NCBI RefSeq assembly: GCF_002571385.2
Contig: NW_019218685.1
Span: forward strand, 1-64,000
Length of the DNA stretch: 64,000 bases
Origin: Stylophora pistillata
Lineage: Eukaryota
Direction: 5' to 3'
The stretch's first letter is position 1, and every line of letters begins with the position of its first letter. Positions 23,786 to 36,600 of this stretch are shown here, piece by piece. The position numbers were made by a program, and so were the translations under genes. The notes beneath the pieces are model-generated. The model was not told where the DNA came from and did no database searches. It saw only the letters and a program-made list of their open reading frames with translations.

Positions 23786-26483
23786 TACTACCTGTTTAAT
23801 AATATTTCAGATATCCAGAATTAATTTTACAGGTGTATTAACATAAGTATTTTGCTGAAATATTCGCAGCCTCTAAGTAAATCTGTTTCGAATTCTTAAC
23901 ATAGAGTACAATAATAATTACCTTGGTGATGAGCTAGATTTTTTAACAGTAACGATTTCCAAAGTGAACAAACTTCTTCATTTCTTTACTTACGACGCTG
24001 CAATTCTATTTTTATACTAGATTTATTAAATTCCCTCCTTTCGGCCTCTTTCCGAATCAAGTCTCTCGGAGCACTGACCGATATGATTGTATCTAACCTT
24101 TTAAGATAGTTGGATGAGGTATATTTTTCCACTCTCTAAATGTCTGCAGGAGACAACCTTCATGAACAATGGGACATTAGCCTCACTTCAGCTTGAAGCG
24201 ATAAAAGTAACGAGTGGACCTATTTCTGCAGGGTAAGAACTTGTCTTTGAAAAATATAACAGCGTTAATGCAAAAGTCATCATCATCTTCTAACCATGTC
24301 AAAACTGAAGTTTACAACTGAAAAATCCAAACTTTACCTCAACTTTTTTTACTCTGCCTAAAATGAAGCCCACACAAACAGTATTTTGATCGCTTCCTAC
24401 AATTCAAACTGGAATTGTCTCTTAATAGAAAGCAAAAAAAATTAATGCTGTCATGAATCTTTAATCAAGACCAAAGTTTTCCAAGTTATGTCTATATTTG
24501 CTATTCGAATTGAACTTGTTCACCCAATGTTGATATTTTCAGTCTGATTTCTCAAAATAAAATTCCTCATTAAATTTTACCAGAAAGATCGAAATACGTC
24601 GGGTTACTTCAGCGTAATAGACTGTTTTTCAGGTTTGAATTTTGTTGAAAAGCAAACCAATATGTGAAAAGTTGTACAACTGCCGTTTCGGTTATGCTCA
24701 ATTAGTCGAGTAGTTTAAAGACCCTGTAATTTCAATCCAAAAAATCTGAAATAAAATTAAATATAAAATTACGATATTCATGATAAANCACGACCGCGTT
24801 TCAAGGATCAAGAGTCTGGCGACTAATGTGACGTCACTTCGAGAACCCAACAATCTGTATTTCGCGCCATTTTGCACAGTTCACTGGTTATGTTTGGAAG
24901 GTTAGATTGATATTGGTCGCAAATATGCCGCAGAATGAATCTAGTGCTAGAAAGGCTTTCGCAGGTCGACGACTGGCTGAGAATTCCTTGAGCGTCTTCT
25001 CGAAGTGACGTCACAAGTCTACTCTGCCCAGATCCCCATTTACGCGGTCGTCGTCCATTCGGATCTCGACTACAACAGGGCATAAAATAATGAGGATTTA
25101 ACCAAATCCAATAATTTCTTCGAAGAAATACTCACCAAAGGAGGAAGATTTTCTTTGAAGTGAAAAAAAATTTAGGGGTCAGGTGCACTTTAAGAACAAA
25201 CCCTGCCTGCACTTCGGCATATATGCTGCGTCAGCAGAAAAAACGTAGAATGAGAGAGTGAACTCTTACTACAATTAATTTACACTGCAAAGATATGCAA
25301 AAATCTCCAGGTGAAGAAACTTCTGGTGAGAGATGTTTTTCTTTCCTTTAATTCCTCTTGAGGCAGCTTTTCTGATCAAAGCAAAGCCACAACAAAACGA
25401 ATTGTAACAGCGAAATGCTTAGGCTTAATTCATCTTAGTTAAATCATTCTTATGTTTGCTTTATCATTCTCCCACAACTAGAAAAACTGCATTTATTCAG
25501 GCCAATGTCACACAACAGACCCCAGCCATAGACAACGCAACTGAAGTGATTTTACACTTTACGTTACCAAGTTATCTCATTTACGAACAGTTCACCTCAA
25601 ACGGATCACGTACCCCAAGTGACGTCACCGTTTCTCGTGACGATAAATTTCTCTCCCTTACAATGAAGGTAATTTCATTCATAACACGTCAATGATGTCT
25701 TCCACGGGGTAGACATGGAGGATTCTAAACGAAAAACATCCTCCCCCGGGGTTATTGCTACCTGTGTCTGCACAAGTAATTAAGTCTTCGGAGAATCCGC
25801 TCTCGTAATAGTAAGATAGCAAAGAGTTTTGTTTATTTCCGCCTATAAACGTCGTTCAGATTGAAATTCGATGACAACTTGAGAACGACACAGGGGGAGA
25901 ATATTTAGTGGCTTGACCAGTCCAAGGTACAATTATTCTTTCAAAGTGGACTTCATTTGTTTAGTTTCAATTCCATCACAAGATCGCAATGCTATGTTAT
26001 GAAATTGCTATGAATTTGTCTCTATAGTCCATCAGGGTAGTCATCTTCGCATCTGTCCTTTTAACTTGTGTTGCCCATGAAATACTTGAGCATTGGGTAA
26101 CATCTCAAAGGTTGGCGAAGAAGGATTGTAAGTTTGGATCGATTGTAAATTGAGCTCAGTTTAGTCCGAAAACCCCTGTACGTAAGATTGTCTATAAGGA
26201 ATTCGTATGGCAATCTCACTTTATCAATGTCATTTAACTCTTGTTTTGAAAAGTTCGACGAGCTCTTGACAACGGAGTACGTGGCTGTACAAGCAGCATT
26301 TCACTTGGATCCGAACAACAATTTCCATGACGACTTATTTCATTAGGCACCATGTAAAGTGAGCCTGCGATACCAACGTCACGACCCGTGCGGCTGTGAA
26401 TCCAGAAACAACCATGACGTAATGGCGGAGATCCCTTTCTACAGTCCAGGTGAGCAGTGCAAAAAGAATCGCGAAGCTCTCTA

Positions 26484-26720
26484 TTGAGTATCGAAAGTAA
26501 TCCAAGACTGCATTGGTTTTGGTACATTGCGCTCTGGGATTAGTCCCAGAAATTTCTCCATGCTTTCAGCCAATTGTTGCTTGGTGATCCACGTATTTAA
26601 GCGCTTCAGGTAGTTTGTTGATTTGAAGTTTGAGTTCTGATTGATTCTCTGTGATATCTTCCTTCGTTCTGATTGGTCACTGAGATTGCTCTGGGTTTGG
26701 TTTTATGAAACTCGATGGGC
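26484..26720. repeat. Interspersed repeat (CCAATCA/TGATTGG-rich MITE family; also about 33380-33635, 55285-55540 and 57920-58165)
   Basis: Shared (T)TGAGTATCGAAAGTAATCC / GTAATCCGG...GATTGGTCC motifs in four places. Confidence 0.6.
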
Positions 26721-33600: not shown

Positions 33601-36600
33601 TGATACCACTACACTCGATCAAAGAGCGCTCAAATGCACCAAGAAATCTCTGATGACGACGGAAGATTTCTTCCATCAAGAACCCGTTGGTGTATTTCTC
33701 ATAGAGTGAACTGCATTGAACACAGTAAATCAAGCCTAAGTGGTATCTGAATGTTGAGAATAAAATTGTGGCTCTCTTCCTCCAACAGATATGAGGGTGG
33801 GCTGTCTTGGATTACCATGTGAAAGTGGCACATGCGAAGAAACACCAAATGAAGGCTATAAATGTAATTGCTTTCCAGGATTTAAAGGAATCCATTGAGA
33901 CGAAGGTACGTAAGAATTTAGATATAGAGCTACTCTATAAGGTTTCCCGTACTTTTGTGTGGGATATACCGGATTGTACAAGAAAGGGATCAACGAGTCA
34001 AATATCAAAAATAAAGTGCTACTCCTAAGACCAACTGAGGCTGAAAGCGAGATCGAAATCAAATTGCAATGCAAAGCATCCATGCTCCTCAAAATTAAAA
34101 AATCCAATACCATGGAGCATTTATTACCTCTCAATCGAGGAGAATATATCAATGTTGTAACTTATATCTGTTATCCATGAAATCTAAGATTTCTGAACTT
34201 CAATCAGCCAGGACCTTTCGCCTTCACGTTGAGGATAGGATGAAGTACGCTCAATATAAAGACAGGTAACAAAGAATGCTGCCATGATTCTTTTCCTCAG
34301 ATATTAACGAATGTGCCAGCAATCCTTGCACCAATGGAGGTCAGTGTAAAGATGAGGTGAACGGGTTCAGCTGTGTCTGTTCCCCCGGATTTACAGGAAA
34401 CCAGTGCGAAATTGGTGAGTAACAGAATTATTTTAAATGAGAGCCGCCAAACCGTATTATATTGCGAACGCCCACTAAATGGCTGTCTACATAAGACATT
34501 TTTGACCAGTTTTTTATTTTCTGCAAACATTTCTTGCAGACTTTGATGAGTGCGCAAGTAATCCGTGTCTTGGGGGAGTGTGCGCTGACCATGTTAACCA
34601 GTACACGTGCATCTGCAATCCCGGAAAAACCGGCAAACACTGCGAATTCGGTAAATTCTAGTTAGTTAAACTCGAAATCTCACAGAATCTTCAAGAATGG
34701 AGAAAATTAACTCGGATTCCAAAGGATAAAAATGGAAAAGCTTCGACCGAATAGCCGAAATGAATTGAAACCTTTGTTCAGCCTTCACAAAAGAAGTGGA
34801 GGTTGCAGTCAGTGAGTAAAAGAAATAACCCGAATTTTTCGAGTTCGTAGTTTCAGTCCACATAAATCTTCTCCATTCTTGGCGATCCATGTTCATATTT
34901 GGTTTTCTCGTGTCTCCGGCCTAATGTTTGATTATCCACGCAAAAATGAAAAAGCAAATAAAGAGAGGGGAACAATTAGTGAGTTGGTGTCTTAGTCCAT
35001 TTTTCGTTCAGTTTCAATGACCTCCTACCCCAAGTGCTAATCTCATACCCAGGTCTTACTGTGTGACTGCAACTGGCCGTAGAAAGTCTGGACACGAGCC
35101 TACCCCACCCCTTCTCCATCAGTCCCTCAACAATGCATCAGCAACTCGTAAAACAACTAATAGATCTACATTTCGTTTGAAAACGATTATTTTTTTTCAA
35201 GCCTGAGAAACAAGGCCCGTTCTAATATTTTTGCCTTTTTCTCGCTAATATAAAGATACAACGTGTATGGTCAGCAACCCGTGTTTAAATGGAGGAACGT
35301 GCAGCGCAACGCACGGTGGAGGCTACACTTGCCAATGTAATGTTTTATTTGCTGGAATCAATTGTCAACTGGGTAAGTCGACTGTCTTTCGTTACGGTAC
35401 AAAGAAACAAACAGTAGGTTCTCTAAGTCCAGTGGTATGGGGGACCAGCCGTTTTTCATTGCCTGAGGGGGAAGGGGAGGGTCGGATAAAGTTTTGGGAG
35501 ATTACATGCATGGTTTACGAGGGGGATTAGTCGTCAAAAGAATATTACAGATCCCTATGGAAGGGGATCAGGTAAATTGTATCTTGACACAACCAAAATC
35601 CGCCAACACACTCCCCCCCCTGCTCTTCCAGATGATAAAAATAACGAGCGGTCCCTAAAATTCTGGGGTAATTTTCTGTTTTTTCCTTGGATACCTGAGT
35701 TATCACCTGAGATTACCTGTAATGTAAATTTGAATGAAGTTAATGTTTTCAAGTACTTATTCCTTCACCAGACTTAATTTTGTGTGAGAACGCCTTCTAA
35801 ATATTTCATTTAAAATTATGAAATTTTGAACCGCTGCCACGCACTTTATTTCGCTTTACCAGTGTACTAACCCCCGTGGGATGCCGGGAGGAAGCCAAAG
35901 TGGAGTGGTTTAGCCCGGCAAATCGATGGAAAGTGAAATCTATTAGTCTTATGAAATTTCTAGGGATTTATCGGCACTATAAATGATAGATAGATAATTG
36001 ACCAATAATTGCTTGCGAACCTATCTTGGCAATTTCACGTTTTCTCTTAATCAGAATCATTTAACTGTTGGAGGTCAACTGTAAGTAACAATTACCCAAC
36101 CTGGCCAGTCACAGGCAAGTTCGACAAAATCGCCTTCTCGCTAAGCGCTGACCATTACGTGTTAGGAATTAGAGTCGGATCAACCTCACCAGAACGAGTT
36201 GATGTCACGGTAACTGTCAAGATAACTCACTCTGATGGGTGTGTAATTGTCACCAAAACCATCTCACACAGATTCCCGGATTGGACAAGTGACCCAGTTT
36301 TTTTCGACCAGGCAGTTCTCCTGACTGCTGGCCAGCAGTACATCGCAGCTTCGCATGTGGCGGCACCGAATTACAATTACTTTTCACTACGGAAATACAA
36401 AGAAGGGGCATCCTCGGTGCAGTGTGGTGGAATTACTGTTACTTTCTCCAAAGTTTCACCCGCAGAGTTCGCTGATTCAAATGGTTCCAACGTTTTAGAG
36501 GGACGGGTTCCAGCTCTCATCTTGAGGTCTCCATGACAGATTCTTTCCCTTCTTCTTAAAAGCATCACAGAAAGTCCTCATTAGCAACAGGGTCTCAATC

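What the first reader, a model, noticed from the sequence alone, without database searches (positions are those of the whole stretch)
25663..36536. Secreted discoidin-EGF protein ending in a PHR domain
Seen: signal peptide, two F5/8-C domains, an Asp-box region, four phase 1-1 EGF exons, then a last exon with a PHR-like pattern (W...G..DKIAFS...VFFDQAVLL..GQQY...G..SVQCGGITVTF...SNGSNV.EGRVPALIL) and no TM helix. Established: PHR domains are known from cytosolic proteins (MYCBP2/Highwire/RPM-1 and BTBD1/2/3/6). Inference: exon shuffling exported a PHR beta-sandwich into an extracellular lectin, matrix or recognition protein. I do not recognise this architecture from any characterised protein.
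Basis: partly seen in the sequence, partly recalled or inferred. Interest (0 to 1): 0.75.

Follow-up and report, generated by a model that had tools for sequence, protein, structure and literature searches.

The report
Coral secreted protein with PHR domain
A coral gene splices a binding domain so far described only inside cells (the PHR domain of ubiquitin-ligase proteins) onto the end of a secreted discoidin-EGF protein, as part of a wider undescribed coral family, although this copy is interrupted by two stop codons.

Summary
The core of the finding holds. The last exon (36055-36536) is a true PHR domain: Pfam 40.4 bits against a cut-off of 23.6, an AlphaFold model with pLDDT 94, and best fold matches to BTBD2 and MYCBP2 PHR crystal structures (TM 0.80-0.85). 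RNA contigs from two studies join it by GT..AG introns to four EGF exons and on to the second discoidin domain.

First, the assembled reading frame holds two TGA codons: one in the first discoidin exon (26840-26842), and one exactly where the sixth cysteine of EGF1 should be (33896-33898). A related coral contig has TGC at that second site. RefSeq therefore models only the last 293 residues (Stylophora pistillata, "notch 1-like").

Second, the architecture is not a one-off. PHR sits at the C-terminus of several extracellular layouts in stony corals: membrane anchor-collagen-Ig-Ig-PHR genes in tandem arrays, H-lectin/C-lectin/EGF-PHR, and EGF6-PHR. In every case examined here it is encoded by a single final exon that starts in phase 1. 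On the tree these domains lie apart from the cytosolic BTB-BACK-PHR genes, which are greatly expanded in this genome.

Five literature searches found no paper on this. I rate it a new variant of a known kind, of moderate interest. Function is inferred only.

The parts
25663..25668 (+). Exon 1 (ATG AAG, then GT donor). Inferred start codon.
   Evidence: Sequence only. No read support.
26028..26127 (+). Exon 2: signal-peptide-like stretch (SIRVVIFASVLLTCVAHE...). Ends in phase 1.
   Evidence: AG/GT sites and frame. Kyte-Doolittle 19-residue mean 1.99, the only value above 1.1 in the gene. Inferred.
26760..26974 (+). Exon 3: start of the putative first discoidin domain. Holds the first in-frame TGA.
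   Evidence: No Pfam hit. Weak match to the first domain of the paralogue (E 5.7e-4 in a small database).
26840..26842 (+). In-frame TGA number 1.
   Evidence: No relative was available to show which codon stands here elsewhere.
27481..27588 (+). Exon 4: middle of the putative first discoidin domain (..LVTSEDGLEWKE..).
   Evidence: Splice sites and frame. No Pfam hit.
28008..28194 (+). Exon 5: end of the putative first discoidin domain (..ARFVRIVL..VELFRC..). An alternative phase-1 donor at 28174 cannot be excluded.
   Evidence: No Pfam hit.
28675..28877 (+). Exon 6: start of the second discoidin (F5/8 type C) domain.
   Evidence: PF00754 24.6 bits, profile 1-55. Splice sites.
29325..29444 (+). 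Exon 7: middle of the second discoidin domain.
   Evidence: PF00754 15.6 bits, profile 55-88. Its 3' end is the loose end that X2 and X3 contigs carry before 30809.
30811..30955 (+). Exon 8: end of the second discoidin domain.
   Evidence: PF00754 15.1 bits, profile 96-127. RNA joint 30955>31632 in X3.
31632..31722 (+). Exon 9: middle region of unknown fold.
   Evidence: RNA joints. No Pfam hit.
32096..32145 (+). Exon 10: single Asp-box motif (STSDGGGTW).
   Evidence: RNA joints in X2 and X3. Translation.
32290..32595 (+). Exon 11: middle region, 102 codons, unknown fold.
   Evidence: RNA joints. No Pfam hit and no Atlas hit. One paralogue in the genome, 33% identical, on C486.
33134..33214 (+). 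Exon 12: end of the middle region.
   Evidence: RNA joints. 77% identical to an exon of metagenome contig L054.
33789..33905 (+). Exon 13: EGF1, with five cysteines and a TGA where the sixth should be.
   Evidence: PF00008 26.9 bits. RNA joints..
33896..33898 (+). In-frame TGA number 2, at the sixth-cysteine position of EGF1.
   Evidence: Aligns codon for codon with TGC in L054. The RNA letter here was not shown.
34301..34414 (+). Exon 14: EGF2 (calcium-binding type start, INECASNPC).
   Evidence: PF00008 41.3 bits; EGF_CA 26.6 bits against a cut-off of 27. RNA joints.
34540..34650 (+). Exon 15: EGF3.
   Evidence: PF00008 28.2 bits. RNA joints.
35256..35372 (+). Exon 16: EGF4.
   Evidence: PF00008 31.6 bits. 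RNA joint 35372>36055 in X2 and X3.
36055..36536 (+). Exon 17: whole PHR domain and the stop codon. Starts in phase 1.
   Evidence: PF08005 40.4 bits. AF2 pLDDT 94.4. Foldseek best hits 3no8, 3gbw, 3hwj. Profile against PDB sequences.
36537..37397 (+). 3' untranslated region (end approximate). AATAAA at 37034.
   Evidence: X3 contig 16 has 747 letters beyond 36650 (computed from its length). No SECIS or other RNA family match above chance..

Best explanation
WHAT IT IS. This is a real, spliced, 17-exon coral gene (Stylophora pistillata by the RefSeq name of its partial product). The layout is: signal peptide, two discoidin-type domains (the first weakly supported), a roughly 175-residue region of unknown fold with one Asp-box, four EGF domains, and a C-terminal PHR beta-sandwich. 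There is no membrane anchor.

ORIGIN OF THE PHR EXON. The PHR domain is homologous to the PHR of BTBD1/2/3/6 and MYCBP2. It is carried on one terminal exon that starts in phase 1, so it fits behind phase 1-1 EGF or Ig exons. The same kind of exon ends several other extracellular coral proteins: membrane anchor-collagen-Ig-Ig-PHR in tandem arrays, H-lectin/C-lectin/EGF-PHR, and EGF6-PHR. The most economical reading is a single escape of PHR from the cytosolic BTB-BACK-PHR stock, followed by exon shuffling among secreted proteins.

HOW IT WORKS (inferred, not shown). The protein is a secreted bridging or recognition molecule. The discoidin domains hold a glycan, lipid or collagen surface. The EGF array is a stiff spacer. 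The distal PHR binds a second partner, as PHR is thought to bind substrates in Cul3 adaptors.

STATE OF THIS COPY. In the assembled genome the copy carries two nonsense codons, one replacing the sixth cysteine of EGF1. It is therefore a transcribed null allele or a young pseudogene. The family is under purifying selection in other corals.
For: PHR IDENTITY.
- Pfam 40.4 bits against 23.6.
- AF2 pLDDT 94.4, pTM 0.89.
- The 4 Foldseek hits with E <= 0.001 are all PHR crystal structures, TM 0.80-0.85; the next hits have TM 0.51 or less.
- A profile of 30 extracellular-type PHR sequences finds BTBD2 (2.5e-22) and the two MYCBP2 PHR domains (4e-15, 2.6e-13) among PDB sequences.
- Protein Atlas: top 3 clusters are 'PHR domain-containing', score 0.94-0.95.

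SPLICING.
- Nine GT..AG joints, with a single contig from 32287 to beyond 36650.
- The 17-exon model sums to 2553 nt and is frame-consistent with AG/GT at every exon.

FAMILY.
- 23 proteins found with the PHR of Montipora P0021. All those with names are from Montipora, Acropora, Oculina, Porites or Stylophora; most carry collagen, Ig and PHR (Pfam).
- 8 PHR exons on contig C542 are the closest paralogues in this genome. They map to the RefSeq collagen-Ig-PHR models.
- 7 of 7 of those exons have a phase-1 acceptor 8 nt before the Cys codon.
- Metagenome contig L054 has, in order, an exon-12-like exon, 6 EGF exons and PHR.

TREE AND SELECTION.
- On the tree the extracellular groups A (13 rows) and B (22 rows) lie together on one side of a branch with support 97/92 against 26 cytosolic-type rows.
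- dN/dS on the PHR exon is 0.20-0.50 in 14 of 15 pairs among six metagenome contigs; the 15th pair has a single synonymous difference.
- A paralogue lacks PHR and has CUB instead.

NONSENSE CODONS.
-. TGA aligns with TGC in L054.
- The RefSeq model covers only EGF2-4 plus PHR.
Against: - Exons 1-7, and therefore the signal peptide, have no read support here.
- The first discoidin domain gives no Pfam hit in 4 of 4 exon pieces.
- Joints come from assembled contigs of 2 of 4 runs. X1 showed none, and the raw-read run X24 put 0 of 8 reads on exons.
- The RNA letters at the two TGA sites were not visible: one search left 9 rows unshown, and the EGF1 pieces carry 1 (X2) and 2 (X3) unlisted differences.
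- Among 1.84 billion representative proteins, no long model carries a group-A PHR. The only hit with EGF plus PHR is the 293-residue RefSeq fragment. So the full discoidin-to-PHR layout is documented in this one genome only.
- 7 of the 9 listed exon differences between the assembly and RNA contigs change the residue. That fits relaxed constraint on this copy.
- No ligand, secretion or expression site has been shown for any member.
- The tree is unrooted, and group A sits on a long stem (1.57).
Confidence: 0.6

Rival explanations
1. The two TGA codons are private to the sequenced haplotype, or are assembly errors. Under this reading the species makes the full-length secreted protein.
For: Spliced polyadenylated-library contigs of this gene assemble at word depth 13-25 in X2 and X3. 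That is easier to understand for an mRNA not destroyed by nonsense-mediated decay (general knowledge, recalled). The EGF1 pieces of those contigs differ from the assembly by 1 and 2 letters that were not listed. The PHR frame is intact here and in all 7 members read from the closest relative's cluster.
Against: Two independent errors that both make TGA within 2.5 kb of coding sequence are unlikely. RefSeq's pipeline, which uses RNA data (recalled), produced only the part downstream of the second TGA. No protein of about 460 residues spanning the site turned up in the search with the RefSeq fragment. Listed exon differences are 7 non-synonymous to 2 synonymous.
Confidence: 0.25
2. The TGA codons are read as selenocysteine or are read through, so the assembled allele is translated in full.
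For: TGA number 2 aligns exactly with a Cys codon (TGC) of a relative. That is the classical Sec/Cys signature. Both internal stops are TGA.
Against: No SECIS match, even at E up to 10, in 36400-38400, which covers the whole 3'UTR seen in RNA. None at gathering score anywhere in the window. The position is a structural disulfide cysteine of an EGF domain. TGA number 1 has no known Cys counterpart.
Confidence: 0.04
3. The protein is not extracellular. The inferred 5' exons are wrong and the product is a cytosolic PHR protein like its relatives.
For: Exons 1-7 are not supported by reads here. No signal-peptide predictor was available.
Against: The RNA-proven part alone holds four EGF domains with full cysteine sets in 3 of 4, plus the end of a discoidin domain. 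These are domain types of secreted proteins (general knowledge). No BTB or BACK is found upstream. Related PHR exons follow collagen, Ig, C-type lectin and H-lectin domains.
Confidence: 0.04
4. The EGF-PHR junction is an artefact: a chimeric contig, or read-through between two neighbouring genes.
For: The junction evidence is from assembled contigs, not single reads.
Against: The same joint, GT..AG and in frame, appears in contigs of two runs from two studies. RefSeq's own model contains it. The order EGF...EGF-PHR recurs on independent metagenome contigs L054 and L056-L059.
Confidence: 0.02

Closest known systems
PHR domains of BTBD1/2/3/6 (BTB-BACK-PHR Cul3 adaptors) and of MYCBP2/Highwire/RPM-1
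   Same: Same domain family by Pfam, by profile against PDB sequences (BTBD2 2.5e-22) and by fold (TM 0.80-0.85 to 3no8, 3gbw, 3hwj). The conserved C..(R/W), NG(S/T) and GQ(I/F)P..(I/L)F motifs are shared with the coral BTB-BACK-PHR genes. PHR is proposed as the substrate-recognition module of these adaptors (PMC1257465, passages read).
   Different: No BTB, BACK, RCC1 or RING part is present. The domain follows EGF exons in a protein with a signal-peptide-like start. It is the most divergent PHR in this genome that still passes the cut-off by a wide margin: 39.7 bits, against 80-176 bits for most of the 79 matches.
Coral collagen-Ig-Ig-PHR proteins (uncharacterised RefSeq models, e.g. XP_068705583.1 of Montipora foliosa; Stylophora models named 'Peroxidasin-like', 'neural cell adhesion molecule L1-like', 'Collagen alpha-1(VI) chain')
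   Same: C-terminal PHR on one terminal phase-1 exon in an extracellular-type protein. They are the nearest paralogues of the window's PHR in its own genome, at 32-38% identity.
   Different: Different N-terminal scaffold: an N-terminal hydrophobic anchor (read by eye), a collagen triple helix and two I-set Ig domains. They form tandem arrays of at least 8 copies. Their PHR is much closer to the Pfam model (72-92 bits) and ends in an extra cysteine.
MFG-E8 (lactadherin) and EDIL3 (Del-1): secreted EGF plus two discoidin domains (recalled from general knowledge, no call)
   Same: Secreted, no membrane anchor. EGF repeats combined with two discoidin domains. This is the basis for the bridging-molecule model.
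   Different: Domain order is reversed here (discoidins first). No RGD in any of 17 exon pieces. There is an extra middle region and a PHR end. No sequence relationship was tested.
Other recognition domains of Cul3-adaptor type that also occur outside the cell: MATH in meprins versus TRAF/SPOP, Kelch in attractin, BTB-BACK in secreted LGALS3BP (recalled; only 'secreted glycoprotein' for LGALS3BP was seen, in abstract listings)
   Same: Precedent for a cytosolic protein-recognition module being reused in secreted proteins.
   Different: Different folds and lineages. Whether the C-terminal part of LGALS3BP is PHR-like was not tested. The search listed no paper that holds 'BTB-BACK-PHR' together with an LGALS3BP term.

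Membership tests
PHR domain (Pfam PF08005) | Score above the curated cut-off over nearly the whole profile | tested here: met
   40.4 bits against 23.6, E 5.8e-10, profile 9-149 of 151. 39.7 bits in the genome-wide scan.
PHR domain (Pfam PF08005) | Beta-sandwich fold that superposes on solved PHR domains | tested here: met
   AF2 pLDDT 94.4. Foldseek 3no8_A TM 0.81/0.82, 3gbw 0.81/0.80, 3hwj 0.80/0.85. All other hits have TM 0.51 or less.
PHR domain (Pfam PF08005) | Profile-level sequence homology to the characterised members | tested here: met
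   Profile of alignment A1 against PDB sequences: BTBD2 2.5e-22, MYCBP2 PHR1 4e-15, PHR2 2.6e-13. The next hit is at 0.039.
BTB-BACK-PHR (BBP) Cul3 adaptors | BTB and BACK domains upstream of PHR in the same protein | tested here: not met
   The exon upstream in the mRNA is EGF4. No BTB or BACK hit in any exon piece. By contrast, the neighbour-contig gene L016 has BTB, BACK and PHR.
MYCBP2/Highwire/RPM-1 (PHR proteins) | Two PHR domains inside a giant RCC1-like/RING ligase | tested here: not met
   One PHR domain, at the C-terminus, with the stop at 36534-36536. Model of 850 codons.
EGF-like domain (PF00008) | Pfam score above cut-off and six conserved cysteines | tested here: met
   4 of 4 exons are above 21.5 bits. 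3 of 4 have six Cys. EGF1 has five Cys plus TGA at the sixth position.
F5/8 type C (discoidin) domain, second copy | Pfam PF00754 match across the domain | tested here: inconclusive
   Three exon pieces at 24.6, 15.6 and 15.1 bits cover profile 1-55, 55-88 and 96-127. Each alone is below 28.2. The exons were not joined, so the whole domain was not scored.
F5/8 type C (discoidin) domain, first copy | Pfam PF00754 match across the domain | tested here: inconclusive
   0 of 4 exon pieces hit. Pairwise matches to the second copy have E 0.05-0.3. There is a weak match to the paralogue's first domain, whose own pieces score 13.5 and 14.5 bits.
Selenoprotein | In-frame TGA aligned with Cys in relatives | tested here: met
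   Met for 1 of 2 sites: 33896-33898 aligns with TGC in L054. No relative was available for 26840-26842.
Selenoprotein | SECIS element in the 3'UTR | tested here: not met
   No SECIS family among 4 chance-level matches at E up to 10 in 36400-38400. Only a tRNA at gathering score in the whole window.
MFG-E8/EDIL3-type bridging proteins | N-terminal EGF with RGD, followed by two C-terminal discoidin domains | tested here: not met
   The order here is discoidin, then EGF. RGD is absent from 17 of 17 exon pieces; junction codons were not tested. The family's definition is recalled.
BNR/Asp-box beta-propeller | Several Asp-box repeats forming propeller blades, with a Pfam BNR match | tested here: not met
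   One motif only. No Pfam family for exons 9, 11, 12. No Atlas hit for exon 11.
Coral extracellular PHR proteins (group defined in this report) | Whole PHR on one terminal phase-1 exon behind extracellular-type domains, on the extracellular side of the PHR tree | tested here: met
   Phase 1. Same in 7 of 7 cluster exons. Groups A and B lie on one side of a 97/92 branch.

The most novel reading that the evidence does not exclude
Stony corals own an undescribed class of extracellular recognition molecules built on the PHR beta-sandwich. The domain escaped once from the substrate-recognition end of Cul3 adaptors (BTB-BACK-PHR), which are themselves hugely expanded in corals. As a mobile phase-1 exon it was then mounted on collagen stalks (collectin/C1q-like, probably trimeric), on lectin arrays and on discoidin-EGF scaffolds. 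The tandemly duplicated, fast-changing set would serve as a lineage-specific repertoire for recognising microbes, symbionts, other colonies or matrix. The window's gene is one member of the set, caught in the act of being lost.
Probability: 0.3. Interest if true: 0.75.

Novelty: new variant of a known kind. Interest (0 to 1): 0.55.

Why it matters
In the papers seen here (PMC1257465, passages) PHR is described only as part of intracellular ubiquitin-ligase proteins. Its binding partners are poorly known (recalled).

A family in which the same fold is secreted would matter in three ways:
- It adds PHR to the short list of recognition domains used on both sides of the membrane.
- It gives coral biology a new candidate repertoire for recognition or matrix assembly. 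These genes currently hide under misleading automatic names such as 'notch 1-like', 'peroxidasin-like', 'collectin-11' and 'hemicentin-2'.
- It offers soluble, naturally isolated PHR domains with which to ask what this fold binds.

For genome annotation, it shows one locus where two stop codons made the pipeline keep only the 3' third of a gene.

Tried and rejected
DEAD ENDS.
- Middle region: exon 11 gave no Pfam family and no usable Atlas hit. Exons 9 and 12 gave no Pfam family. Its fold stays unknown.
- The search with the RefSeq fragment P0001 was swamped by EGF proteins. Of the 120 rows listed out of 275 hits, only P0001 had both EGF and PHR.
- The search with P0022, meant to widen the taxonomic range, returned only itself and one fragment. 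So the range beyond named stony corals is unknown.
- The first metagenome scan, with the single exon, found no relative.
- Selenocysteine: considered because TGA aligns with Cys, and set aside for lack of a SECIS.
- A 53-nt mini-intron (donor at 26831, acceptor before 26885) that would skip TGA number 1: considered and judged unlikely on length and donor sequence. Not testable without reads.
- A-to-I editing of TGA to TGG: it would give Trp, not the Cys needed in EGF1, so it is not favoured.

LITERATURE.
- (search listings and abstracts only) and the accession search found no paper on secreted or extracellular PHR (PAM/Highwire/RPM-1 type) domains. Most 'PHR domain' hits are the unrelated photolyase-homology region of cryptochromes.
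- Supplementary tables were closed. Coral skeletal proteomes and cell atlases, where this gene or the collagen-Ig-PHR genes might be listed, could bear on expression and novelty.

LIMITS.
- I searched the spliced model exon by exon and left the joined step out. Therefore no whole-protein Pfam scan, signal-peptide call, junction-spanning hydrophobicity scan or whole-protein fold was made.

Full report
WHAT IS THERE.

The window is eukaryotic, intron-rich DNA of about 40% G+C. A protein identical to the translation of 34301-36533 is in RefSeq as XP_022808679.1, 'neurogenic locus notch homolog protein 1-like [Stylophora pistillata]', 293 residues. So the window is from that stony coral. The runs that hold the stretch are labelled as coral material.

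On the + strand I could lay out 17 exons between 25663 and 36536. Together they are 2553 nt. Every one has AG/GT borders, and the phases chain without a break. I searched this model exon by exon and did not join the exons. Everything said about domains below rests on single-exon translations.

(1) Is the last exon a PHR domain? Yes.
- Pfam PF08005 gives E 5.8e-10 and 40.4 bits against a curated cut-off of 23.6, over profile positions 9-149 of 151.
- An AlphaFold2 model, built on an alignment of 30 relatives, has mean pLDDT 94.4 and pTM 0.89.
- Foldseek against the PDB gives exactly four hits at E <= 0.001, and all are PHR crystal structures. They are BTBD2 (3no8, TM 0.81/0.82), MYCBP2 PHR1 (3gbw, 0.81/0.80) and two chains of MYCBP2 PHR2 (3hwj, 0.80-0.85). 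Every later hit has TM 0.51 or less.
- A profile of the same alignment finds those three sequences at 2.5e-22, 4e-15 and 2.6e-13 among 177,635 PDB sequences, with the next hit at 0.039.
- The ESM Atlas look-alikes are 'PHR domain-containing' clusters at 0.94-0.95.

(2) Is it joined to the EGF exons in RNA? Yes.
- Laying four runs on 30700-36650 gave nine joints. All are GT..AG after the stated small shifts: 30955>31632, 31722>32096, 32145>32290, 32595>33134, 33214>33789, 33905>34301, 34414>34540, 34650>35256 and 35372>36055.
- One 2241-nt contig of X3 carries 32287 through all four EGF exons into the PHR exon, plus about 860 nt of 3'UTR.
- A 900-nt contig of X2, from another study, carries the same joints up to 27 letters into the PHR exon.
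- Contigs of both runs carry, before 30809, letters that are the end of the discoidin exon at 29444.
- Against this, only 2 of the 4 runs show joints. X1 gave unspliced pieces only. The raw-read run X24 laid 8 reads, all in introns. Contigs retaining intron 8 also exist. The evidence comes from assembled contigs, not single molecules.

THE OTHER DOMAINS.

- The four EGF exons pass PF00008 at 26.9, 41.3, 28.2 and 31.6 bits against 21.5. All are phase 1-1 and 111-117 nt long.
- The second discoidin domain is seen in three consecutive exons that match consecutive parts of PF00754: profile 1-55 at 24.6 bits, 55-88 at 15.6 bits, and 96-127 at 15.1 bits. Each piece alone is below 28.2.
- The first discoidin domain is weak. 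None of its four exon pieces hits any family. Pairwise matches to the second copy are at E 0.05-0.3.
- The 'Asp-box region' is one motif in a 50-nt exon. The roughly 175 residues between discoidin 2 and EGF1 match nothing.
- The only strongly hydrophobic stretch is in exon 2 (19-residue mean 1.99). No other exon exceeds 1.04. That fits a signal peptide and no membrane anchor.
- Exons 1-7 are inferred from sequence only.

- The frame has TGA at 26840-26842, inside the first discoidin exon.
- It also has TGA at 33896-33898, in EGF1. EGF1 has five cysteines, and this TGA sits where EGF2-4 have their sixth.
- On metagenome contig L054, a relative's EGF1 exon aligns codon for codon and has TGC there.
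- The RefSeq model starts only after this stop.
- No SECIS-like match exists in the 3'UTR, even at E up to 10, nor anywhere in the window at gathering score. Selenocysteine is therefore unlikely.
- The RNA letters at the two sites could not be seen. Table 3 left 9 rows unshown, and the EGF1 pieces carry 1 (X2) and 2 (X3) unlisted differences.
- Of the 40 differences listed between assembly and contigs, 9 lie in exons. Seven of these change the residue and two do not. This weakly suggests relaxed constraint on this copy.
- I read the assembled copy as a transcribed null allele or young pseudogene. An intact allele in other colonies is not excluded.

THE WIDER PICTURE.

- A scan of the coral's own assembly with PF08005 gave 79 matches.
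- Among the 30 best, most lie in intronless open frames of about 400-490 residues. Their translations show the BTB-BACK-PHR layout. I confirmed one, L016, by Pfam as BTB + BACK + PHR.
- That is far more than the four to seven such genes per metazoan genome reported in PMC1257465 (passages read). Two earlier notes of this scan had seen such arrays elsewhere in the genome.
- The window's PHR is single-copy. Its nearest paralogues (32-38% identity) are 8 PHR exons in a tandem cluster on contig C542.
- Those exons belong to RefSeq models with a hydrophobic N-terminal anchor (by eye), a collagen triple helix, two I-set Ig domains and PHR.
- The same layout occurs in Montipora, Acropora, Oculina and Porites under names such as 'Hemicentin-2', 'Peroxidasin-like', 'roundabout homolog 3-like' and 'Collectin-11'.
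- A 948-residue JGI protein ends H-lectin, C-type lectin, cbEGF, PHR.
- Six metagenome contigs carry PHR exons about 50% identical to the window's. On the longest, L054, the order is an exon 77% identical to exon 12, then six EGF exons, then PHR.
- Among these six contigs, dN/dS on the PHR exon is 0.20-0.50 in 14 of 15 pairs; the other pair differs by one synonymous change. So the exon is under purifying selection in other corals.

EXON SHUFFLING.

- The window's PHR exon starts in phase 1, behind phase 1-1 EGF exons.
- 7 of 7 cluster PHR exons examined have a T-rich tract and an AG 8 nt before the first Cys codon, which is also phase 1. This agrees with the RefSeq junctions.
- A paralogue of the N-terminal half on contig C486 has discoidin x2, the middle region and one EGF, then a CUB domain (78.7 bits) and no PHR.
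- On a maximum-likelihood tree of 61 PHR domains, the window's group A (13 rows, support 100/100) and the collagen-type group B (22 rows, 96/89) lie together on one side of a branch with support 97/92. On the other side are 26 cytosolic-type rows.
- With the root among the ancient cytosolic forms, that is one export. The tree is unrooted and group A has a long stem, so this is an inference.

MECHANISM (INFERRED).

- The domain types argue for a secreted bridging or recognition protein. The discoidin domains would be surface binders, the EGF domains (two with a calcium-binding-type start) a spacer, and PHR a distal binding module. This is by analogy with PHR's proposed substrate-recognition role.
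- The collagen-stalked relatives would resemble collectins and C1q in design.
- Nothing here shows secretion, ligand or site of expression.

NOVELTY.

- Five literature searches (listings and abstracts) found no paper on extracellular PHR domains. Supplements were closed.
- The collagen-Ig-PHR models and their Pfam labels are already in public databases, uncharacterised.
- Among 1.84 billion representatives, no long protein model with a group-A PHR exists, apart from the 293-residue fragment.
- I class the finding as a new variant of a known kind.

Noticed in passing
G000, 79 places; e.g. C272:335745-356535, C445:250133-268638, C1015:3851-22153: Very large expansion of PHR domains in this coral. 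Most lie in intronless open frames of about 450 residues with the BTB-BACK-PHR layout, often in tandem. A 2005 survey reported four to seven such genes per metazoan genome (PMC1257465).
   Followed up: partly
G000:C895:71289-89360 (same contig, just beyond the window's end): Four PHR matches 35-53 kb downstream of the secreted-PHR gene. One of them (L016) is BTB + BACK + PHR by Pfam. So cytosolic-type PHR genes are neighbours of the extracellular one.
   Followed up: partly
G000:C542:43000-132500 (loci L013, L023, L026, L028, L029, L035, L036, L041-L046): Tandem array of at least 8 genes for anchor-collagen-Ig-Ig-PHR proteins. The RefSeq names ('Peroxidasin-like', 'NCAM L1-like', 'Collagen alpha-1(VI)', 'Collectin-11') are misleading. 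At least one model (P0194) looks like a fusion of two neighbouring genes.
   Followed up: partly
G000:C486:55001-65000 (L052): Paralogue of the N-terminal half of the window's gene: two discoidin-like domains, the same unknown middle region (33% identity) and one EGF, then a CUB domain (78.7 bits) instead of more EGF plus PHR.
   Followed up: partly
window 30098-30532 (+), inside intron 7: 145-codon open frame with a GIY-YIG nuclease motif (PF01541, 25.5 bits). It is probably the remnant of a mobile element of the Penelope kind (that name is recalled). An unmatched 103-codon frame lies opposite at 29768-30079.
   Followed up: partly
window 39380-39451 (-): tRNA gene (Rfam RF00005, 33.6 bits), about 2.8 kb downstream of the gene. 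It is the only RNA family at gathering score in the window.
   Followed up: no
Proteins P0002, P0028-P0034 (closest relatives of the PHR exon, 79% identity): Within one 90% cluster, some members end at ..LILRSP as in the window. Others read on with W and about 50 more residues. The stop codon of this exon therefore appears polymorphic (TGA/TGG-like) in the sister lineage.
   Followed up: no
window 30956-31631: Contigs of X2 and X3 that run unspliced through intron 8 stand beside spliced ones. This is either intron retention or pre-mRNA in the libraries.
   Followed up: no
window 34120-34180: The RefSeq model XP_022808679.1 begins with 20 residues (MEHLLPLNRGEYINVVTYIY) taken from inside the intron between EGF1 and EGF2. 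No contig supports that first exon.
   Followed up: partly
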